From assembly GCA_907165135.1 (NCBI GenBank), contig OU015566.1, positions 372,001 through 436,000 on the forward strand: a DNA stretch of 64,000 bases. Reading direction: 5' to 3'. The number at the start of each line of letters is the position of its first letter. Position 1 is the first letter of the stretch. This DNA is from Oikopleura dioica (lineage: Eukaryota > Animalia > Chordata). This document shows, one piece after another, positions 3,364 to 25,184 of the stretch. A program made the translations under genes and the position numbers. The notes below the pieces were generated by a model. The model searched no databases, was not told the DNA's origin, and saw nothing but the letters and a program-made list of their open reading frames with translations.

Positions 3364-3504
3364 CTCTTTCACGGTTTTAGCCGTAAAAGGCCTCGCGGGG
3401 ACCAAAATTCTAGAAAAATACGATTCAGTGTGGTCCTTCTTGTACTAATATAGTTTGAATTTTTTTTTATACACATATCTTTATTAATAGTCATAGCATA
3501 AAGT

Positions 3505-3723
3505 TGTAGAGGTTTACTCTCTATATAATAAACTATCAAACTTTCATAGTATTGTAATTTATTTGGTCAGTGGCTAATTTGGAAAAATAGCTGCTCGTGG
3601 ACTAGTGACAGCCGGTTATATAGTGAGCTCAAGTGCTCTTGAAAAGCGCCGCGCCCAGCTCGGGCGACTTCCTTCAAGTGCCAACTTGATTCATCGGGAA
3701 AATAAAGACAGTAAATCCCTATA
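3505..3723 (-). mobile_element. 3' LTR (219 bp) of a Ty3/gypsy-type LTR element
   Basis: Reverse complement of 15898-16116 with one mismatch seen. On the minus strand it is preceded by the polypurine tract GAAGGAGGGAGATAG and followed by ACTT (TSD). Confidence 0.9.
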
Positions 3724-4492
3724 CTATCTCCCTCCTTCGTCAGAAAATAGCAGATTTGGGAGGAAGTGTTGTAGGATAAGGCCAGAGCGGCTTTGAACAG
3801 GCGAAAATCGAAACAGAAACGAAGGTATTAGGAGCTGGTTGAAGCCGAGCAATTGGCTCTAGACGCCAGGTCAATCAAAGTCAGGCCGAATTCGAGATAG
3901 AGCAACGCAGTAAGTGTCCAGTTGGGTTTGATTTAGTCGCATCGAGGCGATTTCCGCTCGATTGATTTCAAAATTTTCTTGGTTCTGGTGAAATGTTCTT
4001 GGTGGCATGTTATCCTTGCTTGCCAAAGCAATGTCGGATTATTTTCAACCCTTTCTTTCCCTCTCCTCTGGGGTTTTCTATTTTACGTCGTATGAATTCA
4101 CGACTTCCCCTTCGATCAAAGTTAGTCTCGTGGCGGTCCGAGCTGATTATGTATTACGAGGTTTCGCCGTTGATCTAAACGCATTTTTGTTCTTTTATTC
4201 GAGTTCTTTTCGCTCGTGAATTTTTTTTTCAAAAACATATTATGGTCAACTCAGCCTTTCGTTGCCGACAATTTTCGTCATAAAATCAAATATAAATTTC
4301 GTGGAATCTGTCAATCAATTTAACATTACTCCTTGTTATATCGATGGAGCCTTGTTAAGTTCGACCATGGTAGAGTTGGTGTTTCAAACGCAGCTCAACC
4401 AAAGTTCGCATTTCATTTACCGGTTATGCTCATTTTTCTGTGGAAGTCGTCAACTGCCAGTTGATGAGTGTCGGAAGCATTGAATGCTCCAG
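3724..4492 (-). mobile_element. 3' internal segment of the same LTR element, separated from its 5' part by the inversion
   Basis: Lies between the PPT/LTR and the hAT left end. It joins 19231 through the shared 8-mer TGCTCCAG/CTGGAGCA. Coding capacity is decayed. Confidence 0.8.
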
Positions 4493-5077
4493 CAGGGTGT
4501 CAAATCGCGGGGGATTTTGAAGGGATTGCGCGCCACAGCGCCGTTTCGATCCCACGGTGTAAGGGATCGCCTCGCAACGAGAGGCAACGAAAAGGGAGCG
4601 CTCACAGAAACAAAGGGATCGCGCCGATCCCTTCGCGCGTGGGATATCCCTTCGCGCAAGGGATCTAAAATTTCTGAAAACGAGCGATCATGTAAAAATT
4701 CAACAACGATCATTTTTTAATGCGAAAATTGACCAACATATAATAATTCTTATCCTTTCAACGAAAAAACTAACCAAAATCATGGCATAATCAATCCGAC
4801 TTTAGGTTTTTTTGTTTAAAATTTATTTTATTCATGTAAAAATTCACCATCCTTTTGTCTTCATCACAGATGGTTGGTACCTCGAGTTTTTTTCCGTCTT
4901 CCCTGTGATATCATCTCCAGCTGTTTGGATATAAACCCTTCATATCTGATTCTCGCAGCGGGGTATTACTAAGATACTATACTAATGATCGGAAATCAGC
5001 CCATCTGCAGAAGGACACCATCTATCCAGATGTATTGTCAATATAAAGTCCTCCAAAAATGAAATTTTTTCGTAAAT

Positions 5078-8000
5078 ATGAGTCAAAAACGACCATTTGA
5101 TGAAGGTCCTTTGCTTTCTCCACCATCAACTCCGTTTGAGAAAAAGAAAAAAACCAAGGATGAGTTCAAGAAAATTGTAGAGATTCTAGAAGAAGATGAG
5201 AAGCTCATTTGCACTTCGGAGATCCATCATAATTACAAAGCAGATTTCAAACTAGAGAAGATCACGAAGTCAGACCAGACGCCGACGCCATATGTCATTT
5301 GCCGGAGCCAATTTTGCACTAATGCTGAATACAAACATAAGGTAAGAAAAAATTGACCAGATTTGAATTTAAATTAACCTTATCATGTAAAAATTAACCG
5401 GTAAAATTAAACCCTTTCAATTTAAAAATTCGATTTTAATTTTTCATGCAGAAATAAACCTTGCTCAAGTAAAAAAACTTTTTTCAAGAAAAAATCGACC
5501 CTTTTTATGTAAATATTGACCCTTTTAATGTAAAAATTGACCCTTTTAATGTAAAAATTGACCGTTTCCATGTAAGAATTGACCCTTTTCATGCAAAAAT
5601 TGACCCTTTTCATGTAAACATTAACCCTTTCAATGTAAAAATTGACCCTTTTCATGTAAAAATTGTTCCTTCCCATGTAAAAATTGACCCTTCCCATGTA
5701 AAAATTGACCATTTCATGTAAAAATTGACCCTTCCCATGTAAAAATTGACCCTTTCCATGTAAGAATTTACCCTTTTCATGTAAAAATTGACCCTTTTCA
5801 TGTGAAACTTGCCCTGGCTTGAGAATAAATAAGCCCTCTTCATTTTTGACCAGTCGAAAAAATTAACTCTTTTATAGGTTTTCTTTGGCATTCGAGGCAA
5901 TTTGGCGAAAGCGAACCATGCGACTGACTACTACGTGAAACGTCACATCCAAGAACACCATCATTCAACCGCAACCGACGCCGAAGAGCTTGAGGAAATC
6001 GCCGCAGAAGTTGTTGCAAACGATGGTCTCTCGATTGGTGCTTTTGAAACCGAAACGATGAAGAAATTTTGCGCAAGGGCTCATCAGGCAATAGCGAATG
6101 GAATAAGCAGTCACAAAATTGTGAAGATTCTCAGGTAAAAATTGACCGTTTAATTTAGATAAATAAATTTTTAAGGCGCAAAAGTACCGTTTCCAATGGT
6201 ATCGTCAAGTCAAAGCTGCCTGGTCTTATCCAGGAAAACAGATGCTGCTTGGTCCTTGATGGGTTCGATTGCCCTCGGCTAACGAAAGAAAGAAGTAGCA
6301 AATACCTCGGGGTCTTCATCGGGTTCTACGATTCGAACCTGCGAAAGACTCGATTTTTTCTTCTTCACTACGGGGTCATCTTCAAAGCAACTGATGCGAA
6401 TGTACGTCGACAACTAGAAAACGTCCTCTCGGATTGGAATATCCTCGACTTTTTTCACGCAAAACGACTTCCAGTTGTCGGAGATGCGCCGATGGCTCAG
6501 GCCTTCTCTGACTATTTTGCCGTTGTCTGTGCAAGCCACACGATTTCGAATCAGTTAAAAAGGTAAATACATCATTCTTCTTTCATCAAATAACGTCTTT
6601 ACTTTAGATATATTACCCTTGTCCAGAGCGATGCAATCGTCGGCGATAGCTGTGTCGAAATCGAGAAAGCTGTCTCAGCATGCAATCATCGAGCTGAACG
6701 AGACGACTGCTCCGAGAAATCCTTCAATGATCTAGTGAAAAGCTACACTCCAACTGAAGATGAGCTCAAGCACATCAGGCAATTCTACCCGAATTACGAC
6801 AAATTCGTTACGATCGACAGGATCTACTACATCAGATTCAGGTTCGTTCTTCATCATTTCATGTAAAAATTGACTTTTTCATGTAAAAATTGACCCTTTC
6901 CATGTAAGAATTGACCCTTTTAATGTAAAAATTGACCCTTTTCATGTAAAAATTGACCCTTTTCATGTAAAAATTAACCCTTTCCATGTAAAAATTGACC
7001 CTTTCCATGTAAAAATTGACCCTTTCCATGTAAAAATTGACCCTTTTCATGTAAAAATTAACCCTTTCCATGTAAAAATTGACCCTTTCCATGTAAAAAT
7101 TGACCCTTTCCATGTAAAAATTAATCATTCCATGACAAAATTAACCGAAGTCATGTAAAAATTAACCGTTATTATGTAATAATTGACTTTATCTTTCAGA
7201 TCTTTCATCACGACGTACAAGCAGCTCATGGCAAACGAGCCTCTTCTTCGTCGTCATCAGAAGTACCTGACCGACTCAAAGTCGATCACACACGAAATCG
7301 ACTGGAAGCTTGTTCATTACCTCTACTCAGTCTCTCAAGTCTTCGAGCCTGCTCTGGCGTCCACCGACTCGGATCACTTCTCGGTTGGAGACACCCTGGC
7401 AAAACTGTTCGACTTGCTGAAATTTTTGCTTCAAGTTGATCCGGCTGACTTCAAGGAAATCCACCAGGAGCTGATTCTGACCGTAGCAGACTACATTTTC
7501 GGTGCAAACATCACTGGAAGGAAGCCATCGAGAGGATCCTACATCAAATCGAGAGCAAATCCAGCTGCTTTGGTCGGGCTCTCCCTTGACTTCTTCAGCC
7601 GCCACTTCGAATTCACCTTGATCCGTAACCGACTTGACGACGCCTTTGAGAAGGATTCGTTCATCACCCAGTCTACATACAACACCCTCAACACTTGCTT
7701 TGATACTGCAGTTCCTGTCTGGAAGGAGACAGTGCGCAAAACCTTCTTTGACCTCGCCGAGCAAACCAAGCCAAGCGAAGAAATCTTTATTCTTGTAAGT
7801 AAAGGTTTATTATTTCCCGGATCTGGTTAATTTTTTCCCGCAAAGGGGTAATTCTTATCAAGTTTCGATTAGTTTCTGCATCTAGCGGTTAATTTTTACA
7901 TGACATCGGATTACTCTTTCATAAAAAAGGTCAATTCTTACTCAGAGCTGGTCAATTTTTACATAAAAAAGCATAAATTATAAACATTATTTTAGGTTCC

Positions 8001-8529
8001 TGTTGAAAACCAGCAACAGACGACACCATCGGCAGCTACTTCATCACAGCCAAAGACGTTGACTCCTCCAAGCTCGCAGGAGCGCGCTCCGCCGACTCCT
8101 CCATCTTCTCAAGCAAAGTCGACTTTCGAGGAAGAAATGGAGCAATATTCAAGCGACGAGGATGAATGCGAAAAATCATCAACTGATGAGTTCTCTGCAT
8201 GGTTCAAAAAGGAGAACAAGACGGAGCGCAAAGAAAGCGTCAAAAGATACAAGCAATGGTTGAACCAGCTCGATCCCCAGTTCAAGACCTCCGCCAGTAC
8301 CGCTGAACGAAGTTTGATGTATTTCACACATCACGCTGGAACTTACCCGACATTCGCCAGAATCGCACAACTCGTACGCTCAACTCCTGGCTCAAGCGGC
8401 AGCATCGAACGTCTCTTCTCAAAAGCGAACGATATCATGTCTTCAAAACGCAACTGCTTGAACACCAGTACTGTTGAACTCATTCTACAAGTGTCTTCTT
8501 ATCCAAATGTACAGAATCTATTTGAATAA
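5078..8529 (+). CDS. hAT transposase, 6 exons (5078-5341, 5878-6134, 6176-6562, 6608-6841, 7200-7794, 7996-8529), 756 aa
   Basis: All five introns are GT-AG and the phases join to 2271 nt with no stop. Motifs: BED-like C..C/H..H split by intron 1, LVLDG (D1), VVGDA (D2), CASH (CxxH), IRFRS (equivalent to TRWNS) and C-terminal PGSSGSIERLFS (hAT dimerisation domain with catalytic E). Confidence 0.92.
5380..5810 (+). repeat. 21-bp minisatellite (CATGTAAAAATTGACCCTTTT) in transposase intron 1
   Basis: Tandem units are directly visible and produce the spurious MKRVNFY antisense ORFs. Confidence 0.9.
6855..7170 (+). repeat. Same 21-bp minisatellite in transposase intron 4
   Basis: About 13 near-perfect tandem units. 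Confidence 0.9.
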
Positions 8530-8914
8530 ATGTTTTTCGCTAAAAATTATGCGTCGAAATCCTGCATTTATGACCCCTTTGCATGCAAAAATTAACCGAA
8601 TTCATGAAAAAATTAACCTTGATCATGCAAAAATTAACCCTTTCTTAGAATAAATTGACCGAGGTCATGTAAATATTAACCGAATTTATGAAAAAATTAA
8701 CCTTTATCATGCTAAAATTAACCCTTTCTTAGTATAAATTCACCGAGGTCATGCAAATATAAACCGAACTCATGAAAAAATTGACCTTTATCATGCATAA
8801 ATTAACCCATTCTAAGCATTAATTGACCGAGGTCATGCCAATATTAACCATTTTCATGGACAAATTTACCTTAGTCGCGTAAAAATCGACCAAAATCGGA
8901 TAAATCAGGCTTTT

Positions 8915-9265
8915 AGCCGATCAAAACGCTCTTAAATGGCCCTTAGCCAATCAAAACGATCTAAAATGGCTCTCAGCCAATCAAAACGAGCGAAAACGTC
9001 TATCAGCCAATCAAAACGAGCGAAAACGTCTATCAGCCAATCAAAACGCTCGAAAATGCCCCTTAGCAAATCAAAACGCTCGAAAATGTATATGAGCCAA
9101 TCAAAACGCTCGAAAATGTCTATCAGCCAATCAAAAATCTAAATGCTCAAAAAATGGTTTCGGCCAATCTTAATGCTGCAAATAGGCTTTCCGCCAATCA
9201 AAAAGCTTAAAAAATGATTCCAGCCAATCAGAATGCCCAAAAAAAAAAAATTTGGGCCAATCAAA
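8915..9265 (+). promoter_or_regulatory. Array of CCAAT boxes (AGCCAATCA) at about 30-bp spacing upstream of the cargo gene
   Basis: CCAAT at about 8947, 8977, 9007, 9037, 9097, 9127, 9164, 9194, 9224 and 9257, plus variants at 8917 and 9067. Matches the NF-Y consensus RRCCAATSR. Function is inferred. Confidence 0.6.
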
Positions 9266-9409
9266 ATGCTCGAAATTTCCTCTTTGGGAAAAAGTTCTTA
9301 AATGTTGACTTTTAAAAGTTAAACATTCGCCTTCCATAGAATTGCACAAAAAATCTCTAGAACAAATGTTGATTTTTGTGTAAATTAATAATAATCGTCA
9401 GTTATAAGT

Positions 9410-10107
9410 ATGCCCAGGAAGAAAGAAGAGTTCCCTATTTGCTGCACACTCTGCTTGCGCAGTTTAAAAATGTCAACTCTCGACTTTCATTTTAAACGTT
9501 ATCACAAAGAAATAGAGCCAAGTCAACGACGAAATTACATTACAAAATGTATTATTAAAAAAAAAGTCGCAATTTCTTTCAGGAAATTTAAAAAAAAGAT
9601 AAGAGTGATTCTTAATTTGATTTTTTTTAAATAAAATAGAAATCTTGAAGTAAATCAAGATTGTTTCCTCGATTCTACTGTGCGGGAAACATATCGAGAC
9701 GATCTGGGAAGAGTCAAGAGTCACCAAGTTACCATTCGCTCAATAAAGGCGAAAGAAGATAAGAAAAAGTTCAAGAAATTCGTAGAAACGGCGCGTGAGA
9801 GAGCAGCGGCGAAGAAAGAAAGGGGTCGGTTATCCTTATATAACCTTTTTTGTGAAAATCTTTATTCGGTTTGTTCAATAAGTCAAAAAATATATTTAAC
9901 TATTTTTAGTCACCACCGATTATTCTTCCTGCTCCAGTGACATTAACTAAAGACAGTCAATACGAATGTCCACTCATGACAGACAATTGTTCATCTTCAT
10001 ATGCAGCATCATCCTGTGAAAAATGTCCGGAAATTTGCACGAATTGTTACCAACAAGCATGGCACCCAGGCTACAAGTGCATTTTTTGCATGAAAAAATT
10101 GTATTAA
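9410..10107 (+). CDS. Cargo gene in hAT-A: N-terminal C2H2/BED-like finger, basic middle, C-terminal RING-like Cys8 cluster (probably 3 exons)
   Basis: CTLC-x11-H-x4-H at 9410 onward. Open frame 9640-9823. Frame 9910-10107 reads ECPLMTDNC...CEKCPEICTNC...KCIFC. Joining the frames needs non-canonical GA/GG donors, so the junctions are uncertain. Confidence 0.55.
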
Positions 10108-10432
10108 GTTTTTCAACTTTCTGTTTCATTCGAAATTGTCCAATTCTAGAGTAAAAGTTTTGTGAAAATTGAGTACACTATGTTTTTCCGTGAGAATCCC
10201 TTATTATATCTGTTCAAGATTCCCCAATACATTTCGAATCAATTATTAAGTTTGAAAATCACTGTCTTAGAGCGCAGGCTCCGCTGGCGCCAGAAGCGCT
10301 CGATTTGGCGCTCTGGCTCCCGCGATCCCTTCGCGTTCAAAATGGCGCGCGAGCGATCCCTTCACTCTTGGGATCGAGCGTAGGCGAGTAAGCGCGATCC
10401 CTTCTCGATCCCCCGCGATTTGACACCCTGAA

Positions 10433-13400
10433 CAGGGATGTAAATCACCACAGCCACCCCACCACTGTGGTGGGGTGATTTTTCACCATCCCCTTTTTTC
10501 CGTGGTGGTGGTGGGGTGATTTTTCACCATCACCTTTTTTCAGTGGTGGTGGTGGGGTGATTTTTCACCAACACCTTTTTTAGTGGTGGTGGTGGGGTGA
10601 TTTTTCACTAACACCTTTTTTAAGTGGTGGTGGTGGGGTGATTTTGCACCATTTTTTTTCGAGAAGTGGTGGTGGGATGATTTTTTACAATGGCCATTTA
10701 CATTTTATCTGATAGAAAAATATCATTTATTAAGATAAATAGATATAACTTGCGACATAAAAACTACTGTTTATTATAAAATTTTTTAATTTCTTCTCCA
10801 AGCTCCTTGAAATTGCCAGCGAATTCGTTTTGCAAATTTCTTTCGATCGTAGCCATCTTCTGGCGATTTCGACTCGGATCTCTTGTTTTGCTGGAGACGA
10901 TGCTGAACAATCGCTCGATTTCTGATGACGACGAATTTATTGAGAGAAGCTTAAATTTATATTAACGAAAATAATAAGAATCAATCGACTTACATAACCA
11001 GTAATTTTATACAATCTTGGATAATCCATTTTGTTGGTCTCCCAAAAAGATCGAATAAGTGACGTTACTGATTGACTCTCGCCTGGGGAGTATTTTCCAT
11101 TGATCTTCAAGAATAGCTTCCAGTCCGGTAGATCCATTATTGATTTCATCTAAGATGCTATAAGGCCAATAACCGTTATTTTTACTTGCCATTTATTCCC
11201 TTCGCGGGTGCTGAACGAGAAGCTGAGGCGACTAGCGAAGGATCAACATCAACTTCTTGGTCATCCGAATTTTGAGCAGGCATTTCACACAAGGTCGGCT
11301 CACCGCTTATTTTTCCCCAAAGATCTTTTATGTACTGCTTTGCGTCGTTTTGCCAGTTGGCAATTTCTTTTTTTAGAATTTCGGAATTTTTCCGAAAAAA
11401 TAATCCGATGATTTCTCCATATGCCCGATGAGTTTATATAAATTGCACTTGTGTGTCGGCCAATAGACAAAAACCGCGGCTATAAAATATAATGAAGTAA
11501 CTTTGAAACATGAAAATTTATACCTTTAGTAGCGCCCAAGACGCGAGAACTCTCTTTTCCCTCGACTTCTCCAATCGATTCACTAACATAAGCTTTTCCA
11601 GCCATGAAAAACATGAGTTTTATGAAACAGCTGCGAGCGAAAATTTCCTTGTATTCTCTTATTTCGAAATCTTCTTCAAACTCTCCATCCTCATTTTTCT
11701 TGGGAACTGCAAGTTTTTCAAGTTCGATACCAACTTGTTCAAAGGTCGGCAAATTCTCGGTGATCTTAATTTCATATGCAAAAATGATAATTAATTAATA
11801 ATAATTAATAATAATAATTAATGATAATTGTTCATACTTTTGCATCTGTTCTTTCCATCCTCTTGATATATTTCATAATGCAGCTCAAAATGGAGTGAAG
11901 AGCCGCGCATTTTTCGAACGCAGGAATTCCATGGGACAAATTCTTTAGAACAGGTGAAAATTGGGTCATTTTAAGACTAGAGAGGTCATTTTCAGACTAG
12001 GAAAGGTCACATACGACTATTTTCACCCATTTCCTGTATCAAATATCGCTCATTAGATGTTGCAGAGTCCATCGTAAGAAGTTGATTTGACCAGGAGAGA
12101 ATCAAGCGCAAATGCGTCGTTAAGGATGTAAATCGTATCAGATGCAACGGGCCGGGTAAGGGATATGATGTTTTGATCTTGTGTGCACTTTCCTCTGACA
12201 ATGTAGAGTCAGGCTGCTCCAGTTTGATCATTTTTAATGAATCCGCGGGGGTCGGGACCAAATCGTAAAAATAGTCTCCAAGGGATGGGGGGCTTCCTTT
12301 TGGTTTGTTGAGGGCGTCTATATGTATGGAATTAAGAGAAAATATGTTAAAAACATACCGAGAGTAGCTTTGGAAATGCCTTTTTTTGCTTCTTGGATGA
12401 AAGATTTGATCGAGTCGAAAAATAATGAATCTAGATGAAAAAACTTTTCAGCTTGTTCTATCGCTGCATTTGCAATAAGACTAAAACAAGAGTTCGTTAA
12501 CAATAAATTTTGTTCAAAATTTCATTTCTATGCGTAAAAAGCCCTTTTGCTATGCGAAAAAAGTCCTTTTTCTATGAGACAAAGACCCGCATATTGATTT
12601 GAACTCGACCTTAAAGAGTGACACATGCAGATATTACTTAGCATGCTTATGTTTCTAACCGACCAGTGACACTGCAAATCTGATGTAATCGCAATTTTTG
12701 CGGCGTCCAATGAGAATTTCTAATTGAAAAATATTATAAGACTTTCTTTCATTTTTACCTCGAGAGTTTGCTCGAAAATTGGAATTGATTCTTCGCTACT
12801 AGTTGAATCGACAGCTTCAAAAATTAGAGGATAAACCACCGTTACAGATCCAAGAGTCAGAGTAAGGGCAATGCAGTACGCTTGATCTTGAAAGTCACTT
12901 GTTTTGTTTATCATCGCTTTGTGATCAACTTGTAGCCCACAGTGACCCTTTTCAATAAAAAATGGCACATTTTCCGAAATATAGACCACCATTTCTTCTG
13001 CGGCGATATTGGCTTCTTTGGCGATAAAGTACCGAGATGATTTGAGTTTGATTGCCTCTTGTGGATCAAATCCAAGTGATTCAAGAAGAATTTCATCTCT
13101 TTTTGACACGATGTCACTTAATTTTTCATGAAGATAAAATCTTATCATCACAAGTCTTACCAATCAAAATAGCTCTGGCTGAGATTTTTAGCGCTAACAA
13201 GATAGGAATTGTATTTTTTTATTCTTGTAACAGCGGCCTCGGGAATCTGTTTCGTATTTTTCTTCGTCTTGGCGGCGGTGAAAGGATCCGAAAAGACCAA
13301 TTCATGGTTACGCGTGATATGAATTTTTACTAAAAAGTTTTTGTTCGAAAAATACGCAGTTTACATTTATCGCGGCTTACTAGGGTTCCTCCACCTTCGC

Positions 13401-13915
13401 ATATGAACTCTGAGCTCTTAGATTTACAGTCACCTTCGCAGCGGGCGTATCCACTGTAATCGCCATTTTCTTTGAAGCCGAAAAGGAAACCTTTAATATT
13501 CCAACCTTCGTATTCGTCGAGTACTTTCTGTACTCGGAGAAGAGTCTTTTGATCTTTCGCCTTGGCGAATTGAACTGACAAATTCTCTAATCTTTTGCGT
13601 TTTGCCATATTTAGCTCTAAAGAACTCGCCCGCGGCAAAAACAAAAAAGTGATATCTAGAATAATTTTGACTAAATTGATCTCGAAACTTTTTCACCTTT
13701 TCAATGGTGGTGGTGGGGTGATTTTTTCACCATCACTTTTTTCAGTGGTGGTGGTGGGGTGATTTTTCACCATCACTTTTTTCAGTGGTGGTGGTGGGGT
13801 GATTTTTCACCATCACCCTTTTTCGGTGGTGGTGGTGGGGTGATTTTTTCCACCACGGATCACCCCACCATTTTGCTGTGGTGGGGTGAAAATGGTGTGG
13901 TGATTTACATCCCTG
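10433..13915 (-). mobile_element. hAT DNA transposon family B, full-length copy (3483 bp)
   Basis: TIRs CAGGGATGTAAATCACCAC and subterminal GTGGTGGTGGGGTGATTTTTCACC repeats. TSD ATTAGAAA (13916-13923) has its partner TTTCTAAT displaced to 25177-25184. Confidence 0.92.
10764..13608 (-). pseudogene. hAT-B transposase, multi-exon, frameshifted
   Basis: Fragments LQVDH (D1), ITSD (D2), CMCH (CxxH) and SINSSSSEIERLFS (dimerisation motif). It has an 11-nt shortfall near 11135 relative to the copy at 56.8 kb, which shifts the frame. Confidence 0.75.
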
Positions 13916-14174
13916 ATTAGAAAGAGCTCAAAAGTTATTCTGATAGAGCTAATAATATTTTTGGTGGTGCAATCACGTGACGCAGAAGAGCTCGTTGAAA
14001 CGTCCAAAAAAGCTGTTTTTGACACCAATTTTGACTAAATGAACCCATGAAAGCTTGATTTGTCCATATTTTTACCCGTTATTTGGGGTTTTTGTCCCTT
14101 CTACCGCCTCACTTGATTGCGCCACCAAAAATATAATTTACTCTATAAGAATAACTTTTTGAGTTCTTTCTTCT

Positions 14175-14381
14175 GAAGTATGAGCCGATCGACCTTGATC
14201 AGGCGTTCAAGGTCGTCAAGCTTTTTTAGGTTTTCGGAGGCCTGTATCACGTGACCACGCGACCAGACCAAAAAATTTTTAATAGCAATTTTTTTAGTTG
14301 GATCAAACTACATTATATCCCGAAGTTTCAGCTCTCTACGTTGATGCTTTCTTGGGGTTGATTTTTTGCGCGTCGGCCCTG
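14175..14381. mobile_element. One arm of a long-TIR MITE (terminus CAGGGCCGACGCG), partner arm at 25185-25390
   Basis: The two approximately 205-bp arms are now direct repeats and become inverted once 10431-19231 is flipped back. The same terminus occurs at 741. Confidence 0.75.
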
Positions 14382-15575
14382 AGTCATGAGCACACAAATA
14401 GAACGGCGGTTGTTAAGCATTTCAATGCTATTTTATGTTGTCTTTTTCTCAAAAGAAACGATTATCATTATAAAATTATTATTGTTATAAATATATAATT
14501 GTCATTTATTAATTAAAAGACAAAACGGACAATTCCGGAAGTTTTTCTTCGGGAAAAAACGCCGAATCTTCGGAATTGTCCGAACTCGACTTGAAATTTT
14601 TTTTGCGTCAAAAGTGCCCTTTTGAAGGGTGTCAACCAGAAAATTGGCTTTTAAGTGCTGCGCAAGGCTTTTTTGACCCTTTCTGATTTATTTTTAATTT
14701 GGAAAAAGGTGGCCCTTAATTATTATTATTAGAGAATAGGCCTCTCAGTTGAATTTTAGTCTAAACTTTTCGGAATCGTGCGCTTTCAAAATTTTTCTCA
14801 TTTTCCTCAAATTCCTGAATTTTCCGTTTTGTCTGTACATTAAATGTCTTGGTTTTTGAAAAGAATTCTGCTATTTTGGATCTAAAAACACAAAAGTCTG
14901 TAAACCTCACCAAGAGCGCACCGTTGTTACTAGGACAGCCCTAAAACTGTTCATTTATTCATATGATATAAGGGACCTCATCTTTTACAAATTTTTGGTG
15001 ATCAGGCCCGCTCTGTATTTATTTTCGAGAATAAGTCGTTTTTGACGAAATAATTTTTGACGAAGAAATCTGCGCAATATAAGTTCAAGTGTTAAAAGAC
15101 ATATGATAATTTTAAGATCAAAAAACGTCTCTTCTGAAAAGTTTTGGCCTTTTATGGACCCCCTCCCCCCACGGTTTGGGTGTTTGATGAATTTCTTGAA
15201 GATAGGCAAAAATAGGGGTTTGCTCATCCAATTTATAAATTTTTAGATGAAGACACTCTTAACCCATCAAATAAAAGCTAAGGGTATGTTCTTTCAAAAT
15301 CAGGAAGATCAAGGATAATTTCAAACTTAAGGTCTTCTCATTGTTACGTCAGAAAAGGACTTATGATCACCTTGAATTCGTTAGAGTTGAGGTCCCTTAG
15401 AAGGATATATGCACAGTTTTAGGGCTGCCCTATAAAAAATACATGCTAATAAGGGTGTAGCTAAGATAAGTGATCTTAATTTTTGATCCGCGCAAATCCG
15501 ATTAACGGATAATTGCAAAATGAGGACGCTTTAACAGCCTGTATCTCTTGACGTGTAGATGGTAGACTTCGTTAA

Positions 15576-15874
15576 TAATCACAAGTTTGATTGTAGAACG
15601 TTTTCGATTTTATTTCAAATCATCATCAGTACAAATTAAGCTTAAGATAAGGAAGAACATTTGTAAAATACCTCTGTTTATTTAGGGCAGATCTTGGCGC
15701 TCGATAAAATCAACTTGTTTTCGTCTTCTCGCGTTTTTGATTTCAGTTAGCGTAAGTTTGCTTTCTCATTAAACAGAGGTATTTTACAAATGTTCTTCCT
15801 TATCTTAAGCTTAATTTGTACTGATGATGATTTGAAATAAAATCGAAAACGTTCTACAATCAAACTTGTGATTA
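15576..15874. mobile_element. Penelope-like pseudo-LTR foldback (105-bp inverted arms, 90-bp spacer)
   Basis: Arms 15576-15680 and 15770-15874, each with a hammerhead motif. The spacer shares TTGGCGCTCGA with the 27-kb Penelope-like element. AGCCTGTATCTC is duplicated at 15536 and 15874. Confidence 0.7.
15816..15859 (+). ncRNA. Minimal type I hammerhead ribozyme (mirror copy 15591-15634, minus strand)
   Basis: TTGTA-CTGATGA-T-GATTT(GAAATA)AAATC-GAAA-ACGTT-C-TACAA: stem I, conserved core, stem II, palindromic stem III and a UC cleavage site. Confidence 0.75.
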
Positions 15875-16117
15875 GCCTGTATCTCCTTAAATTACTTTAT
15901 AGGGATTTACTGTCTTTATTTTCCCGATGAATCAAGTTGGCACTTGAAGGAAGTCGCCCGAGCTGGGCGCGGCGCTTTTCAAGAGCACTTGAGCTCACTA
16001 TATAACCGGCTGTCACTAGTCAACGAGCAGCTATTTTTCCAAATTAGCCACTGACCAAATAAATTACAATACTATGAAAGTTTGATAGTTTATTATATAG
16101 AGAGTAAACCTCTACAA

Positions 16118-16131
16118 TGGTGTCAGAAGTG
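16118..16131 (+). other. Primer-binding site, tRNA-Leu type
   Basis: TGGTGTCAGAAGTG lies 1 nt after the LTR and is complementary to the ...CACTTCTGACACCA 3' end of eukaryotic tRNA-Leu(CAG/CAA). Confidence 0.85.
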
Positions 16132-16138
16132 TTAAAGA

Positions 16139-16850
16139 ACAGCGACTCTAAAAACTGCTGCGCATAAACGACGCAGACAGGTAAGCACAATAGGTGCCCG
16201 ATTAAAAATCGAAAGAAACGACCAGCACAAGCAAGACTGGCACGGAAACCAACTAGTCCGCATTGTCGTGATCACCATACGACCAGCCAAATGCTGAGCA
16301 AGCGCATTAATATGCCGATATCGGTGCGAGAGTTAAGTCTTTGCAACTGACACTCAAACCGTAGAAACAACAACAGCGACTCTATACACTGCTGCGCACA
16401 AACCGACGCAGACAGGTGAGCACAATAGGTGCCCGATTAAAAACAAAATCGAAAGAAATGACCAGCATAAACAAGATTGGCACGGAAACCAACTAGTCCG
16501 CATTGTCGCGATCACCCAACGAACAGCCAAATGCTGAGCAAGCGCATTATTATGCCGATATCGGTGCGAGAGTTAAGTCTTTGAAACTGACACTCAAACC
16601 GTTGAAACAACAATAGCGACTCTATAAACTGCTGCGCACAAACGACGCAGACAGGTGAGCACATAGGTGCCCGATTAAAAACAAAATCGAAAGAAAAGAC
16701 CAGCATAAGCAAGACTGGCACGGAAACCAACTAGTCCGCATTGTCGTGATCACCTAACGACCAGCCAAATGCTGAGCAAGCGCACTATTATGCCGATATT
16801 AGTGCGAGAGTTAAGTCTTTGAAACTGACACTCAAACCATACAAACAACA
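16139..16850 (+). repeat. Three tandem units of about 235-240 bp in the LTR element leader
   Basis: Units start at about 16139, 16373 and 16613 (ACAGCGACTCTA...GCTGCGCA). Confidence 0.85.
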
Positions 16851-17008
16851 ATTAACCACAGCGATGCGTTAAAAAGAAAATCTCCGCCCAAAATGAAGCG
16901 AAATGCGAACATGTGTTAGTCCGTGAAAAGAACTGGAAAATATTGAACGACTGAAATAAGAATATCAAAGTTGAACAAATAACAAATATCAAGGATTTTA
17001 AACTAAAA

Positions 17009-17347
17009 ATGGAAACAGAAGACGTCAAATCTGAAAAAAGAAAAGAGAGAAGCGATTCGCTCCGAGTTAAGCTACCCAACGAAAAAGTCGTCAATATACA
17101 CACGGGTCCAGAGGAAACAGCAGTTACACTACGGGCAAAAATAATTGGCAAACTCGCTCTCGAAAACCTGAAAAAAGAGGAAGTTGCCTTACCCTCAGGG
17201 GTCCGTCTCTATTGCGCAGGAAAAGAAGTCCGCACTGACGCAGAAGTCTCGTCTTTGCCAAAGATACCCACAAACTATAATCGCGCTACCAACGGAAACA
17301 GTAGTACCAATGCAAAACACCTATTATCATCGGGCTGCCGGCATTAA
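17009..17347 (+). pseudogene. Ubiquitin-like domain in the first (gag-position) ORF of the LTR element
   Basis: LRVKLPNEKVVNIHTGPEETAVTLRAKI...VRLYCAGKEV aligns by eye with ubiquitin [28 protein letters not shown]...QRLIFAGKQL. The ORF is flanked by a stop and a frameshift. Confidence 0.55.
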
Positions 17348-17621
17348 CGAACAGAACGATCAAAATCTCGCAGAGCAAGATACAAATCGACGGAGAAAGC
17401 ATTAGGCTCCTCCGTAAGAAATTAACCAGACTATTCGAAGTAAAGAAAGCTGAACGAGTAATGGACGGGACAATATTAGAAGTCCAGGCACCAGTCGACA
17501 AGACGGAGGACCGAGCGTTACGGGAGCAGCTTACCTTTACTGTCCCCACAGCTTCCGGTCCCCTGGACGTCTCTGTATGGCTAAACAACCGCAGTGAATT
17601 GAAAGCTGCAACCGATTTACC

Positions 17622-18083
17622 ATGCCTCTCCCACTTGCCTTGGAAAAAGTTCCTAGGACTATCCCGGCCAGGTTGTCCACTGGAATTTTCGAAGTCAGAA
17701 GCGTACTCAAGGATACGAAAGATGTACCTGAAAACAACGCTGTTTTCATAGCCAAGGCAGGTCGGGCGATGATCCGCGCGCTGTCACTTCAGACAGCCCA
17801 GACAGCGGAGGAGACGCGGGACGTACGACCCGAAGACAAAACTGTTCTCCGTCCTCGGACAACTGTGCTGATGAAACGCCAAAGGGACCCCGGGGAGTCA
17901 AAGCTCTTTCGAAACTGGAAAGGGCGGCTCACAGTCTCGAAGCGTTTAGACGTTTACACTTACCTTCTTGCGTCTGATCTCTACCCAAGACGACAATTTA
18001 TTGCGCACAGGAGCAACATTCGGCCTGTCGCAACTCCTCAAATCGTCGAAGAAAAGGAAGGATGCGCATCCGAGGTACGTTAA
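17622..18083 (+). pseudogene. Pol remnant: integrase C-terminal (GPY/F, SH3-like) region
   Basis: KLFRNWKGRLTVSKRLDVYTYLL...FIAHRSNIRP matches the KL..W.GP..V......Y.L....H...++P pattern of Ty3/gypsy integrases. Confidence 0.65.
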
Positions 18084-19554
18084 ATTCACTTAAACGGAAT
18101 GAAACGTAAAATTACCGGCACGACAGGCAGAGGAACCACGCCAGAACCGGCGGTCAGGCCTTCGTGAGAGAAAACGCATCAACTATAGGTAAGATCCAAT
18201 GCATCTCTTTGGGGAAAGAGCGCACCGACGGTATTCGCATTGGAAAACGTATTGACATCTATTTAGGGAATAAACGCCCTGAAAGAGAACAACTGAAAAA
18301 AATACACACTGAAACTATTGAAATATCGCCCCTTAAGTAGATAAGCAAAACCGTTCCGTTCCTCGAAAACAAAATTATTTCAAGATGAGATTCGGACCTA
18401 AAGATATTTTGGAACGGCTGGTGTTGAACCACCAGCAATCCCTGATGGGCCAATTCGCCATGATGAAATGGCTCTTTGTAATATTCCTTCTCGGAATCCT
18501 TATCCTCGGCTTGAGCCTCGGACTGTTACGCAGCAATCGCTCAGAAATTTGCGCGTATGATTTGCTACTGCTGCCGTCAAAAGCAAGAAGTGCAGCTTAA
18601 AGTTCTTCCGGCTCAGCAAAAGGAGACCCGGCGATGAAAATACGGGCAAAATCTTGGCAGAGCCTCATTCTCTTAAAAAAAAAACTCACGACCACTTCAG
18701 GGTACTAAAATAAGTACAAGATATCTGATTTGCGAAAATCAATTCAATTTTAAAAAGCCCCTTGATAAATTTTTGAAATAATATCTCCGAAACGAGAGCA
18801 GCTCCCTTTCTGAATTTCAATTTCCGACTTGTCAAGTTATTCCAAAACTCAACAACAAGTTGCTCGAGGCCGCCCCTGCCGGCTCAAAATTTTAGCTCGT
18901 CTAAAAACTTTTCGAATCGCCTTTTCGAATTGCTTGCCAAAACCGCGAGTAAATCAAGTTTCCTTCACATCCCATGACACCACCCTTATATACAGTGAAA
19001 ACCCGAAATCTGCGCCTCCAGGGGCCAGCCAAGTTCAAATATTGCCTACCAACAGGCTCCCGCCGAGAAACAATAGGCTCACCTGGCAAGCGATAAAGAT
19101 CGATAATGACCCTAGAATAACCTGCAAGTCACCGAGCAAATACAACGGTTTGCTTCACTCCTTAGGGTCCTGGCACAATTGAACCCGAAATTAAGAAAAA
19201 AAATACAGTCGACACGGAAAAGACTGGAGCACAGGGTGTCAAATCGCGGGGGATCGAGAAGGGATCGCGCTTACTCGCCTACGCTCGATCCCAAGAGTGA
19301 AGGGATCGCTCGCGCGCCATTTTGAACGCGAAGGGATCGCGGGAGCCAGAGCGCCAAATCGAGCGCTTCTGGCGCCAGCGGAGCCTGCGCTCTAAGACAG
19401 TGATTTTCAAACTTAATAATTGATTCGAAATGTATTGGGGAATCTTGAACAGATATAATAAGGGATTCTCACGGAAAAACATAGTGTACTCAATTTTCAC
19501 AAAACTTTTACTCTAGAATTGGACAATTTCGAATGAAACAGAAAGTTGAAAAAC

Positions 19555-20252
19555 TTAATACAATTTTTTCATGCAAAAAATGCACTTGTAGCCTGGGTGC
19601 CATGCTTGTTGGTAACAATTCGTGCAAATTTCCGGACATTTTTCACAGGATGATGCTGCATATGAAGATGAACAATTGTCTGTCATGAGTGGACATTCGT
19701 ATTGACTGTCTTTAGTTAATGTCACTGGAGCAGGAAGAATAATCGGTGGTGACTAAAAATAGTTAAATATATTTTTTGACTTATTGAACAAACCGAATAA
19801 AGATTTTCACAAAAAAGGTTATATAAGGATAACCGACCCCTTTCTTTCTTCGCCGCTGCTCTCTCACGCGCCGTTTCTACGAATTTCTTGAACTTTTTCT
19901 TATCTTCTTTCGCCTTTATTGAGCGAATGGTAACTTGGTGACTCTTGACTCTTCCCAGATCGTCTCGATATGTTTCCCGCACAGTAGAATCGAGGAAACA
20001 ATCTTGATTTACTTCAAGATTTCTATTTTATTTAAAAAAAATCAAATTAAGAATCACTCTTATCTTTTTTTTAAATTTCCTGAAAGAAATTGCGACTTTT
20101 TTTTTAATAATACATTTTGTAATGTAATTTCGTCGTTGACTTGGCTCTATTTCTTTGTGATAACGTTTAAAATGAAAGTCGAGAGTTGACATTTTTAAAC
20201 TGCGCAAGCAGAGTGTGCAGCAAATAGGGAACTCTTCTTTCTTCCTGGGCAT
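19555..20252 (-). CDS. Cargo Zn-finger/RING-like gene, copy 2
   Basis: Mirror of 9410-10107. Confidence 0.55.
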
Positions 20253-21132
20253 ACTTATAACTGACGATTATTATTAATTTACACAAAAATCAACATTTGT
20301 TCTAGAGATTTTTTGTGCAATTCTATGGAAGGCGAATGTTTAACTTTTAAAAGTCAACATTTAAGAACTTTTTCCCAAAGAGGAAATTTCGAGCATTTTG
20401 ATTGGCCCAAATTTTTTTTTTTTGGGCATTCTGATTGGCTGGAATCATTTTTTAAGCTTTTTGATTGGCGGAAAGCCTATTTGCAGCATTAAGATTGGCC
20501 GAAACCATTTTTTGAGCATTTAGATTTTTGATTGGCTGATAGACATTTTCGAGCGTTTTGATTGGCTCATATACATTTTCGAGCGTTTTGATTTGCTAAG
20601 GGGCATTTTCGAGCGTTTTGATTGGCTGATAGACGTTTTCGCTCGTTTTGATTGGCTGATAGACGTTTTCGCTCGTTTTGATTGGCTGAGAGCCATTTTA
20701 GATCGTTTTGATTGGCTAAGGGCCATTTAAGAGCGTTTTGATCGGCTAAAAGCCTGATTTATCCGATTTTGGTCGATTTTTACGCGACTAAGGTAAATTT
20801 GTCCATGAAAATGGTTAATATTGGCATGACCTCGGTCAATTAATGCTTAGAATGGGTTAATTTATGCATGATAAAGGTCAATTTTTTCATGAGTTCGGTT
20901 TATATTTGCATGACCTCGGTGAATTTATACTAAGAAAGGGTTAATTTTAGCATGATAAAGGTTAATTTTTTCATAAATTCGGTTAATATTTACATGACCT
21001 CGGTCAATTTATTCTAAGAAAGGGTTAATTTTTGCATGATCAAGGTTAATTTTTTCATGAATTCGGTTAATTTTTGCATGCAAAGGGGTCATAAATGCAG
21101 GATTTCGACGCATAATTTTTAGCGAAAAACAT

Positions 21133-24100
21133 TTATTCAAATAGATTCTGTACATTTGGATAAGAAGACACTTGTAGAATGAGTTCAACAGTACTGGTGT
21201 TCAAGCAGTTGCGTTTTGAAGACATGATATCGTTCGCTTTTGAGAAGAGACGTTCGATGCTGCCGCTTGAGCCAGGAGTTGAGCGTACGAGTTGTGCGAT
21301 TCTGGCGAATGTCGGGTAAGTTCCAGCGTGATGTGTGAAATACATCAAACTTCGTTCAGCGGTACTGGCGGAGGTCTTGAACTGGGGATCGAGCTGGTTC
21401 AACCATTGCTTGTATCTTTTGACGCTTTCTTTGCGCTCCGTCTTGTTCTCCTTTTTGAACCATGCAGAGAACTCATCAGTTGATGATTTTTCGCATTCAT
21501 CCTCGTCGCTTGAATATTGCTCCATTTCTTCCTCGAAAGTCGACTTTGCTTGAGAAGATGGAGGAGTCGGCGGAGCGCGCTCCTGCGAGCTTGGAGGAGT
21601 CAACGTCTTTGGCTGTGATGAAGTAGCTGCCGATGGTGTCGTCTGTTGCTGGTTTTCAACAGGAACCTAAAATAATGTTTATAATTTATGCTTTTTTATG
21701 TAAAAATTGACCAGCTCTGAGTAAGAATTGACCTTTTTTTATGAAAGAGTAATCCGATGTCATGTAAAAATTAACCGCTAGATGCAGAAACTAATCGAAA
21801 CTTGATAAGAATTACCCCTTTGCGGGAAAAAATTAACCAGATCCGGGAAATAATAAACCTTTACTTACAAGAATAAAGATTTCTTCGCTTGGCTTGGTTT
21901 GCTCGGCGAGGTCAAAGAAGGTTTTGCGCACTGTCTCCTTCCAGACAGGAACTGCAGTATCAAAGCAAGTGTTGAGGGTGTTGTATGTAGACTGGGTGAT
22001 GAACGAATCCTTCTCAAAGGCGTCGTCAAGTCGGTTACGGATCAAGGTGAATTCGAAGTGGCGGCTGAAGAAGTCAAGGGAGAGCCCGACCAAAGCAGCT
22101 GGATTTGCTCTCGATTTGATGTAGGATCCTCTCGATGGCTTCCTTCCAGTGATGTTTGCACCGAAAATGTAGTCTGCTACGGTCAGAATCAGCTCCTGGT
22201 GGATTTCCTTGAAGTCAGCCGGATCAACTTGAAGCAAAAATTTCAGCAAGTCGAACAGTTTTGCCAGGGTGTCTCCAACCGAGAAGTGATCCGAGTCGGT
22301 GGACGCCAGAGCAGGCTCGAAGACTTGAGAGACTGAGTAGAGGTAATGAACAAGCTTCCAGTCGATTTCGTGTGTGATCGACTTTGAGTCGGTCAGGTAC
22401 TTCTGATGACGACGAAGAAGAGGCTCGTTTGCCATGAGCTGCTTGTACGTCGTGATGAAAGATCTGAAAGATAAAGTCAATTATTACATAATAACGGTTA
22501 ATTTTTACATGACTTCGGTTAATTTTGTCATGGAATGATTAATTTTTACATGGAAAGGGTCAATTTTTACATGGAAAGGGTCAATTTTTACATGGAAAGG
22601 GTTAATTTTTACATGAAAAGGGTCAATTTTTACATGGAAAGGGTCAATTTTTACATGGAAAGGGTCAATTTTTACATGGAAAGGGTTAATTTTTACATGA
22701 AAAGGGTCAATTTTTACATGAAAAGGGTCAATTTTTACATTAAAAGGGTCAATTCTTACATGGAAAGGGTCAATTTTTACATGAAAAAGTCAATTTTTAC
22801 ATGAAATGATGAAGAACGAACCTGAATCTGATGTAGTAGATCCTGTCGATCGTAACGAATTTGTCGTAATTCGGGTAGAATTGCCTGATGTGCTTGAGCT
22901 CATCTTCAGTTGGAGTGTAGCTTTTCACTAGATCATTGAAGGATTTCTCGGAGCAGTCGTCTCGTTCAGCTCGATGATTGCATGCTGAGACAGCTTTCTC
23001 GATTTCGACACAGCTATCGCCGACGATTGCATCGCTCTGGACAAGGGTAATATATCTAAAGTAAAGACGTTATTTGATGAAAGAAGAATGATGTATTTAC
23101 CTTTTTAACTGATTCGAAATCGTGTGGCTTGCACAGACAACGGCAAAATAGTCAGAGAAGGCCTGAGCCATCGGCGCATCTCCGACAACTGGAAGTCGTT
23201 TTGCGTGAAAAAAGTCGAGGATATTCCAATCCGAGAGGACGTTTTCTAGTTGTCGACGTACATTCGCATCAGTTGCTTTGAAGATGACCCCGTAGTGAAG
23301 AAGAAAAAATCGAGTCTTTCGCAGGTTCGAATCGTAGAACCCGATGAAGACCCCGAGGTATTTGCTACTTCTTTCTTTCGTTAGCCGAGGGCAATCGAAC
23401 CCATCAAGGACCAAGCAGCATCTGTTTTCCTGGATAAGACCAGGCAGCTTTGACTTGACGATACCATTGGAAACGGTACTTTTGCGCCTTAAAAATTTAT
23501 TTATCTAAATTAAACGGTCAATTTTTACCTGAGAATCTTCACAATTTTGTGACTGCTTATTCCATTCGCTATTGCCTGATGAGCCCTTGCGCAAAATTTC
23601 TTCATCGTTTCGGTTTCAAAAGCACCAATCGAGAGACCATCGTTTGCAACAACTTCTGCGGCGATTTCCTCAAGCTCTTCGGCGTCGGTTGCGGTTGAAT
23701 GATGGTGTTCTTGGATGTGACGTTTCACGTAGTAGTCAGTCGCATGGTTCGCTTTCGCCAAATTGCCTCGAATGCCAAAGAAAACCTATAAAAGAGTTAA
23801 TTTTTTCGACTGGTCAAAAATGAAGAGGGCTTATTTATTCTCAAGCCAGGGCAAGTTTCACATGAAAAGGGTCAATTTTTACATGAAAAGGGTAAATTCT
23901 TACATGGAAAGGGTCAATTTTTACATGGGAAGGGTCAATTTTTACATGAAATGGTCAATTTTTACATGGGAAGGGTCAATTTTTACATGGGAAGGAACAA
24001 TTTTTACATGAAAAGGGTCAATTTTTACATTGAAAGGGTTAATGTTTACATGAAAAGGGTCAATTTTTGCATGAAAAGGGTCAATTCTTACATGGAAACG

Positions 24101-24585
24101 GTCAATTTTTACATTAAAAGGGTCAATTTTTACATTAAAAGGGTCAATATTTACATAAAAAGGGTCGATTTTTTCTTGAAAAAAGTTTTTTTACTTGAGC
24201 AAGGTTTATTTCTGCATGAAAAATTAAAATCGAATTTTTAAATTGAAAGGGTTTAATTTTACCGGTTAATTTTTACATGATAAGGTTAATTTAAATTCAA
24301 ATCTGGTCAATTTTTTCTTACCTTATGTTTGTATTCAGCATTAGTGCAAAATTGGCTCCGGCAAATGACATATGGCGTCGGCGTCTGGTCTGACTTCGTG
24401 ATCTTCTCTAGTTTGAAATCTGCTTTGTAATTATGATGGATCTCCGAAGTGCAAATGAGCTTCTCATCTTCTTCTAGAATCTCTACAATTTTCTTGAACT
24501 CATCCTTGGTTTTTTTCTTTTTCTCAAACGGAGTTGATGGTGGAGAAAGCAAAGGACCTTCATCAAATGGTCGTTTTTGACTCAT
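21133..24585 (-). CDS. hAT transposase, copy 2
   Basis: Mirror of 5078-8529 with identical exon translations. Confidence 0.92.
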
Positions 24586-25184
24586 ATTTACGAAAAAATT
24601 TCATTTTTGGAGGACTTTATATTGACAATACATCTGGATAGATGGTGTCCTTCTGCAGATGGGCTGATTTCCGATCATTAGTATAGTATCTTAGTAATAC
24701 CCCGCTGCGAGAATCAGATATGAAGGGTTTATATCCAAACAGCTGGAGATGATATCACAGGGAAGACGGAAAAAAACTCGAGGTACCAACCATCTGTGAT
24801 GAAGACAAAAGGATGGTGAATTTTTACATGAATAAAATAAATTTTAAACAAAAAAACCTAAAGTCGGATTGATTATGCCATGATTTTGGTTAGTTTTTTC
24901 GTTGAAAGGATAAGAATTATTATATGTTGGTCAATTTTCGCATTAAAAAATGATCGTTGTTGAATTTTTACATGATCGCTCGTTTTCAGAAATTTTAGAT
25001 CCCTTGCGCGAAGGGATATCCCACGCGCGAAGGGATCGGCGCGATCCCTTTGTTTCTGTGAGCGCTCCCTTTTCGTTGCCTCTCGTTGCGAGGCGATCCC
25101 TTACACCGTGGGATCGAAACGGCGCTGTGGCGCGCAATCCCTTCAAAATCCCCCGCGATTTGACACCCTGTCCCTGTTTCTAAT

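What the first reader, a model, noticed from the sequence alone, without database searches (positions are those of the whole stretch)
4485..25184. hAT-mediated inversion with swapped target-site duplications, the footprint expected from sister-chromatid (hybrid-end) transposition
Seen: TGCTCCAG precedes copy 1 (4485-4492) and its complement CTGGAGCA precedes copy 2 (19224-19231). AACAGGGA follows copy 1 (10431-10438) and its complement TCCCTGTT follows copy 2 (25171-25178). Each TSD pair is therefore split across the two copies. Flipping 10431-19231 also restores (i) direct LTRs of the retroelement, (ii) the hAT-B TSD TTTCTAAT on both sides and (iii) inverted arms of the 14175/25185 MITE. Established: alternative transposition of Ac/Ds and P elements gives this A-element-B'-inverted segment-A'-element-B structure in one step. 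Inference: a single event both duplicated the element and inverted 8.8 kb. Ectopic recombination between two prior inserts is an alternative.
Basis: partly seen in the sequence, partly recalled or inferred. Interest (0 to 1): 0.8.

Follow-up and report, generated by a model that had tools for sequence, protein, structure and literature searches.

The report
Transposon-bounded 8.8-kb inversion, swapped duplications
Two identical copies of a jumping gene (a hAT transposon), the only two in this small animal genome, sit head to head around an 8.8-kb stretch that has been flipped; this base-exact rearrangement was made either in one faulty jump or by a jump followed by recombination, a known kind of event.

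Summary
Copy 1 (4493-10430) and copy 2 (19232-25170, inverted) differ by one A in a homopolymer. Each 8-base target duplication is split between the two copies.

Three independent nested elements show that 10431-19231 is inverted relative to its ancestral state:
- an LTR retroelement, with paralogous empty sites;
- a second hAT ("hAT-B");
- a MITE.

The element is a hAT: 23-base inverted ends, 8-base duplications, a hAT dimerisation domain, and collinear matches to Hermes transposase.

By its exact length, the genome is the Oikopleura dioica OKI2018_I69 assembly. In it these are the only two copies of the element; the next relatives are 86-92% identical and carry ordinary matched duplications.

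The sequence alone cannot separate one-step hybrid-end (sister-chromatid) transposition from a local jump followed by recombination between the inverted copies. Published criteria separate them only by identical versus chimeric copies, and identical copies are uninformative when the second derives from the first. My odds:
- one-step about 0.45;
- two-step about 0.40;
- assembly flip about 0.07, because the read lengths make it unlikely.

This is a new member of a known kind. It is of moderate interest as a base-resolved rearrangement in a species known for unexplained genome scrambling. Two look-ups in the scan's earlier notes showed no same-kind finding (swapped duplications) on other DNA.

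The parts
3504..3723 (-). 3' LTR of the host LTR retroelement (outside the inversion)
   Evidence: 220 nt, 1 mismatch to 15898-16117 in inverted orientation. A purine-rich tract lies next to it on the minus strand at 3724-3743.
3724..4492 (-). 3' internal part of the retroelement, ending at insertion site A
   Evidence: Aligns at 94-99% to paralogous copies on C3, directly downstream of the sequence now at 19231.
4485..4492 (+). Target-site duplication A, first copy (TGCTCCAG)
   Evidence: Present once in three paralogous empty sites.
4493..10430 (+). hAT-A copy 1, 5938 bases, with 23-base perfect terminal inverted repeats
8059..8529 (+). Last transposase exon, with the hAT dimerisation domain
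   Evidence: PF05699 at E 1.1e-9. Matches Hermes transposase residues 544-603 at E 7e-5. An upstream ORF at 6249-6566 weakly matches Hermes 190-275 at E 0.06.
10431..19231 (.). Inverted segment, 8801 bases
   Evidence: Orientation relative to the ancestral state is shown by the LTR pair, the hAT-B duplication and the MITE paralogs.
10431..10438 (+). Target-site duplication B, reverse-complement copy (AACAGGGA)
10433..13915 (-). hAT-B, an older unrelated hAT whose terminal 6 bases plus 2 bases of its own duplication formed target B
   Evidence: 20-base inverted ends. A 98% copy at 56079-58082 carries the matched duplication GTAAAGAC.
13916..13923 (+). hAT-B target duplication (ATTAGAAA), the partner of 25176-25183
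13924..14380 (-). Left part of the MITE into which hAT-B had inserted
   Evidence: Intact paralogs continue from this sequence into the arm found at 25184 onward.
15898..16117 (+). 5' LTR of the retroelement (inside the inversion), followed by TGG at 16118, which looks like a primer-binding site
16118..19231 (+). 5' internal part of the retroelement, ending at insertion site A
   Evidence: 98.4% to the paralog at C3:2651496-2654853
19224..19231 (+). Target-site duplication A, reverse-complement copy (CTGGAGCA)
19232..25170 (-). hAT-A copy 2, 5939 bases
25171..25178 (+). Target-site duplication B (TCCCTGTT)
25176..25183 (+). hAT-B target duplication (TTTCTAAT)
25184..25390 (+). Right arm of the MITE
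   Evidence: 93% to 14175-14380, direct now and inverted after the flip

Best explanation
One resident hAT-A element, at site A inside the retroelement or at site B at the tip of hAT-B, had just been replicated. Its transposase paired the left end of the copy on one sister chromatid with the right end of the copy on the other. It then inserted this 'hybrid element' into a target 8.8 kb away on the same chromosome. That single reaction leaves one chromatid with two complete, identical copies in opposite orientation, the stretch between donor and target inverted, the old 8-base duplication split between the copies, and the new 8-base duplication split likewise. Shown: the structure, the derived orientation, exact 8-base duplications at both sites, no loss or gain, and the identity and uniqueness of the two copies. 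Inferred: that duplication and inversion were one event.
For: The structure is exactly the outcome of hybrid element insertion when both ends come from one site (PMC2775673 Figure S1A and discussion). The copies are identical, as that model requires: 0 substitutions in 5938 bases. They are the only two in 64.3 Mb, and the next relatives are 86-92% identical, so the second copy came from the first by a local event. One event suffices. Whatever the rate of later flipping, the swapped state is at least as probable after a one-step origin as after two ordinary insertions (my reasoning). Eight other members of the family have ordinary matched 8-base duplications, so the swap is specific to this pair. 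A related element on C1 has the form 'left end to position 4863, then a full element' with one outer duplication; this is the product predicted when a hybrid end inserts into the sister copy. Alternative transposition is established for hAT elements (Ac/Ds: PMC8225341, PMC3744419).
Against: A single haplotype cannot separate this model from a local jump followed by homologous recombination; the final sequences are identical. Identity of the copies is also expected if copy 2 is a fresh jump of copy 1. Perfect 5.9-kb inverted repeats 8.8 kb apart are good recombination substrates. Hybrid-end events from a single simple hAT element are less well documented than those from paired or fractured Ac/Ds ends (my knowledge). 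The C1 composite also has a two-step explanation: nested insertion, then recombination.
Confidence: 0.45

Rival explanations
1. Two steps. hAT-A made an ordinary local jump with copy gain, either through donor repair from the sister chromatid or by jumping from replicated to unreplicated DNA. It landed 8.8 kb away in inverted orientation. Homologous (ectopic) recombination between the two 5.9-kb copies then inverted the segment between them and exchanged the duplications.
For: Exchanged duplications flanking inverted copies are the classic mark of ectopic recombination (PMC2775673). Each step is common. hAT elements prefer linked targets (my knowledge). The family makes local jumps: two copies of the 10.9-kb composite lie 96 kb apart on C1 with different duplications. 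The species lacks canonical end joining (PMC11067885), so donor gaps may often be repaired from the sister, which restores the element and gives copy gain (inference).
Against: It needs two events within the short time in which 5.9 kb gathered no substitution. No chimerism can be shown because the copies do not differ. An inverted pair of 548-base hAT-B elements 17 kb apart nearby has kept its own duplications, although its homology is much shorter.
Confidence: 0.4
2. Assembly artefact. The real chromosome has two ordinary insertions in inverted orientation, and the assembler placed the middle segment the wrong way round between the two identical repeats.
For: Junction sequences are the same in both orientations, so only reads longer than 5.9 kb plus anchors can decide. 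The assembly went through haplotype merging and Hi-C correction, and heterozygosity is about 3.6% (PMC8008620).
Against: The assembly used 221x Nanopore coverage. One percent of 8.2 million reads exceed 42.8 kb, which is more than 50x coverage in reads longer than the whole 20.7-kb structure (my arithmetic). The window has no gap or N. A haplotype mis-stitch would also duplicate unique flanks, whereas only the element is duplicated, exactly end to end.
Confidence: 0.07
3. The locus flip-flops. Whatever its origin, the inverted pair recombines often, so both orientations coexist in the population and the assembled orientation says nothing about origin.
For: The inverted repeats are long, perfect and closely spaced. 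Large inverted repeats in other systems isomerise recurrently (my knowledge).
Against: No data here. The copies are very young, so there has been little time for repeated flips.
Confidence: 0.08

Closest known systems
Hybrid element insertion of P elements (Gray, Tanaka and Sved 1996), as summarised in PMC2775673
   Same: The ends of sister copies at one site act together. An insertion nearby gives an inversion flanked by two identical inverted copies with exchanged duplications.
   Different: That case is a P element in Drosophila, shown by genetics with known parents. Here it is a hAT in a tunicate, inferred from one assembled haplotype.
Alternative transposition of maize Ac/Ds (sister-chromatid and reversed-ends transposition; PMC8225341, PMC3744419)
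   Same: Same superfamily and the same 8-base duplication at the new junctions. Inversions are made in one transposition reaction.
   Different: The maize cases use ends of two different neighbouring elements (Ac plus fractured Ac) and do not duplicate a whole element. Here a single complete element would supply both ends from sister chromatids.
Galileo-mediated inversions 2j, 2q7 and 2z3 of Drosophila buzzatii (PMC2775673)
   Same: A natural inversion bounded by inverted transposon copies with exchanged duplications, and single-copy targets in the uninverted state.
   Different: The Galileo copies are chimeric, which proved ectopic recombination. Here the copies are identical, so that test is silent.
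Tam3-induced rearrangements at nivea in Antirrhinum (Martin et al. 1988; Lister et al. 1993; cited in PMC3744419)
   Same: A hAT element that produces flanking rearrangements, including an inversion, possibly by alternative transposition.
   Different: I could not read these papers. The comparison rests on the citation and on my memory.
Replicative intramolecular transposition of bacterial IS26 or Tn3
   Same: Identical final topology: a second inverted copy, an inverted segment, and split duplications (PMC10501869 is listed).
   Different: The chemistry differs (replicative cointegrate pathway). hAT elements cut and paste.

Membership tests
hAT superfamily transposon | 8-base target-site duplication | tested here: met
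   Sites A and B here. Eight relatives have matched 8-base duplications. Paralogs show a single copy of A at the empty site.
hAT superfamily transposon | Short terminal inverted repeats starting CAG/TAG | tested here: met
   23 perfect bases starting CAGGGTG
hAT superfamily transposon | Transposase with the C-terminal hAT dimerisation domain | tested here: met
   PF05699 at E 1.1e-9, 38.4 bits against a cut-off of 21.4. Hermes residues 544-603 at E 7e-5.
hAT superfamily transposon | RNase-H-like DDE catalytic core | tested here: inconclusive
   The ORF 6249-6566 matches only Hermes (residues 190-275), but at E 0.06. The ORF 7183-7830 has no informative match.
Hybrid-end (sister-chromatid) transposition product | Two inverted copies bound an inverted segment; both duplications are exchanged; no deletion or duplication at the breakpoints | tested here: met
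Hybrid-end (sister-chromatid) transposition product | The two copies are identical, not chimeric | tested here: met
   0 substitutions and one homopolymer indel. The result is weakly informative, because a fresh ordinary jump also gives identical copies.
Hybrid-end (sister-chromatid) transposition product | The progenitor carried one copy, and no two-copy uninverted intermediate existed | not testable with these tools
Ectopic (non-allelic homologous) recombination inversion | Inverted homologous copies with exchanged duplications | tested here: met
Ectopic (non-allelic homologous) recombination inversion | Chimeric copies that reveal a crossover point | tested here: inconclusive
   The copies have no differences that could show chimerism.
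Ectopic (non-allelic homologous) recombination inversion | A parental chromosome that carries both insertions uninverted | not testable with these tools
   Only one haplotype of one individual is available.

The most novel reading that the evidence does not exclude
Hybrid-end transposition by resident hAT elements is a recurrent, one-step source of small inversions and element duplications in Oikopleura dioica. It would be favoured in a genome that lacks canonical end joining, and it would contribute to the unexplained genome scrambling of this species complex. This locus and the 'partial plus full' composite on C1 would be two of its products.
Probability: 0.12. Interest if true: 0.75.

Novelty: new member of a known kind. 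Interest (0 to 1): 0.45.

Why it matters
O. dioica lineages differ by thousands of rearrangements. The authors who described this stated that they could not find precise molecular breakpoints that a simple mechanism would explain, and they called for within-lineage comparisons (PMC11067885). This locus is a very recent inversion resolved to the base, with both breakpoints, both target sites and the agent identified. It lies on a repeat-rich short chromosome arm (inferred), the class of region that paper found richest in breakpoints (PMC11067885). It is directly testable in existing data: the raw reads, the second individual, the allelic sub-assembly and the Kume assembly. It would also be one of few natural cases where identical copies, unique in the genome, make the one-step route a serious candidate.

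Tried and rejected
A scan of metagenome contigs for the 23-base end found nothing.
I stitched loci already held instead.
- Target-site preference: the relatives' duplications often have T at position 2 or A at position 7. With ten sites and an AT-rich genome this gives no usable signal, and it does not separate the models.
- Retroelement duplication after the flip: only a 3-base match (AAG) flanks the LTRs, too weak to count.
- Haplotype mis-stitch: rejected, because only the element is duplicated, exactly end to end, and not the unique flanks.
- Chimeric walk through two haplotypes that each carry one insertion: judged unlikely, because it would need three switches that reads over 40 kb should contradict (reasoning from read lengths, not checked against reads).
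- A general habit of swapped duplications in this genome: not seen. All complete hAT-B elements have matched duplications, including an inverted pair 17 kb apart, and so do the hAT-A relatives.
- Tam3 papers: not held.
Its two parts were compared separately with paralogs.
Full report
**What is there.** A self-comparison of the first 30 kb finds one large inverted repeat: 4493-10430 against 19232-25170. The copies are 5938 and 5939 bases. They have no substitutions. The single difference is a run of six versus seven A at 7923-7929, a kind of difference that Nanopore-based assemblies often get wrong (my knowledge). Each copy ends in 23 perfect inverted bases starting CAGGGTG.

- TGCTCCAG left of copy 1 and its complement left of copy 2;
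- AACAGGGA right of copy 1 and its complement right of copy 2.

Identity between the copies stops exactly at the element ends, so the boundaries are not a matter of choice. At this base composition the chance of both matches is about 6e-10.

**What the element is.** The last long ORF (8059-8529) carries the hAT dimerisation domain (PF05699, E 1.1e-9). It matches the C-terminus of Hermes transposase (E 7e-5). An upstream ORF (6249-6566) matches only Hermes, in the region of the catalytic core and in the right order, but weakly (E 0.06). With the 8-base duplications and CAG-type ends, this is a hAT element with an interrupted, intron-bearing transposase gene. I did not build a spliced model.

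**Which genome.** The window's assembly has 64,281,565 bases in 19 pieces. That is exactly the length listed for Oikopleura dioica OKI2018_I69_1.0 (PMC11067885 Table 1; 19 scaffolds in PMC8008620). Piece C3 is 2,916,375 bases, which fits the Y-specific region. C4 reaches at least 14.4 Mb, which fits chromosome 1 at 14.53 Mb. If so, the window lies about 0.4 Mb from the start of its short arm. That placement is an inference.

**The middle segment is inverted relative to its ancestral state.** Three nested older elements show this independently.

- *LTR retroelement.* The LTRs at 3504-3723 and 15898-16117 differ at one base and are now inverted. A TGG primer-binding-like start follows the second LTR at 16118, and a purine-rich tract lies beside the first on the other strand. 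The element therefore runs from 15898 rightwards to 19231 and continues in the reverse complement of 4492-3504. Three paralogous copies on C3 read straight through this join with a single TGCTCCAG. That proves both the ancestral contiguity and that the 8-mer is a true target duplication.
- *hAT-B.* This older hAT at 10433-13915 has ATTAGAAA on one side (13916-13923) and TTTCTAAT on the far side of copy 2 (25176-25183). Target B (TCCCTGTT) is the last six bases of hAT-B plus the first two of its own duplication.
- *MITE.* Intact paralogs of the MITE that hAT-B had entered read continuously from the sequence now at 13924-14380 (reverse complement) into the arm now at 25184.

Nothing is lost or gained at either breakpoint.

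**The family in this genome.**
- The two copies are the only ones of their kind. All other matches are 86-92% identical.
- Six of those relatives are single elements, full-length or short derivatives, each with an ordinary matched 8-base duplication.
- Two more are 10.9-kb composites on C1, 96 kb apart, with different outer duplications, so the composite moved as a unit.
- The composite consists of the element from its left end to position 4863, followed directly by a complete element. The two parts are 99.75% alike.
- All complete hAT-B elements also have matched duplications, including an inverted pair of 548-base copies 17 kb apart just upstream of the window.

Exchanged duplications are therefore not a general feature of the assembly.

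**How it arose.** Hybrid-end transposition, in which the left and right ends are taken from the two sister copies of one element and inserted nearby, gives exactly this structure in one step. Ectopic recombination between two earlier inverted insertions gives it in two.

Here the copies are identical, which meets the one-step criterion. But the test has no power, because a second copy freshly derived from the first would also be identical.

Three points lean towards one step:
- It needs one event rather than two, within the short time in which 5.9 kb gained no substitution.
- If the pair later flips at some rate, the swapped state is always at least as probable after a one-step origin as after two ordinary insertions (my reasoning).
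- The C1 composite is another structure that hybrid-end insertion predicts, this time into the sister copy. It too has a two-step alternative: nested insertion, then recombination between the duplicated right-hand parts.

Two points lean towards two steps:
- Local jumps with copy gain are common for hAT elements (my knowledge).
- Perfect 5.9-kb inverted repeats 8.8 kb apart recombine readily (my knowledge).

I put one step at 0.45 and two steps at 0.40.

**Assembly artefact.** Junction reads cannot decide, because both ends of the middle segment abut the same (right) end of the element in either orientation.

The published data make an error unlikely. Coverage was 221x Nanopore, and one percent of 8.2 million reads were longer than 42.8 kb. 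That is more than 50x in reads longer than the whole 20.7-kb structure. The window has no gaps. A haplotype mis-stitch would duplicate unique flanks, which is not seen. I give the artefact 0.07. I could not look at reads.

**Comparison with what is known.** The mechanism class is known: P-element hybrid element insertion, Ac/Ds alternative transposition (PMC8225341, PMC3744419), and Tam3 rearrangements (cited in PMC3744419, not read). Natural inversions with exchanged duplications are also known (Galileo). Full-text searches found no paper that links hAT elements and inversions in Oikopleura. So this is a new member of a known kind.

Its value is in the context. The study of genome scrambling in this species could not find precise breakpoints with a simple mechanism, and it speculated on roles for the loss of canonical end joining and for cut-and-paste transposons (PMC11067885).

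**Limits.**
- The metagenome scan was blank.
- Two Tam3 papers were not held.

Noticed in passing
window 4470-4492 (left flank of copy 1), against L043:4440-4545, L044:4515-4620 and L045:4240-4345: The host retroelement copy lacks 15 bases that all three paralogs have. The deletion lies between two TGAATG repeats, and its edge abuts target duplication A. Only one other indel of 10 bases or more occurs in about 4.1 kb aligned to the closest paralog. It may be chance, or a microhomology slip during gap repair at the insertion junction, in a species that relies on microhomology-mediated joining.
   Followed up: partly
G000:C1:634560-645435 and C1:730273-741147 (loci L004-L017, L029, L030): These are two 10.9-kb composite hAT elements: left end to position 4863, then a complete element, with parts 99.75% alike. 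Their outer duplications differ (GTAATGAT and GTATATTT), so the composite transposed as a unit. The structure is the predicted product of a hybrid end inserting into the sister copy, or of a nested insertion followed by recombination.
   Followed up: partly
window 5400-5815, 6857-7187, 8571-8872 and 8908-9136: Three arrays of a 21-base tandem repeat and one of a 30-base repeat sit between the transposase ORFs of hAT-A, apparently in its introns.
   Followed up: no
window 37252-37797 and 58526-59070: An inverted pair of a 546-base element, 99.6% alike, with TTAA at both ends and piggyBac-like termini. The TTAA duplications cannot show whether the 21 kb between them has been flipped.
   Followed up: partly
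window 12076-13585: The hAT-B copy inside the inversion carries about 1.5 kb that the 2-kb copy at 56079-58082 lacks. I did not characterise it.
   Followed up: no
window 25760-26526: A foldback structure with 354-base arms, 95% complementary and 59 bases apart, lies just right of the MITE arm.
   Followed up: no
G000:C4:319885-320432 and C4:337249-337796: An inverted pair of 548-base hAT-B derivatives lies 17 kb apart, about 35-52 kb upstream of the window. Each has its own matched duplication, so there has been no inversion there.
   Followed up: yes
G000:C5:13914109-13914218 (L027): A solitary right end of a hAT-A relative lies about 64 kb from the full-length relative at C5:13843992-13850064. 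It may be a fractured element.
   Followed up: no
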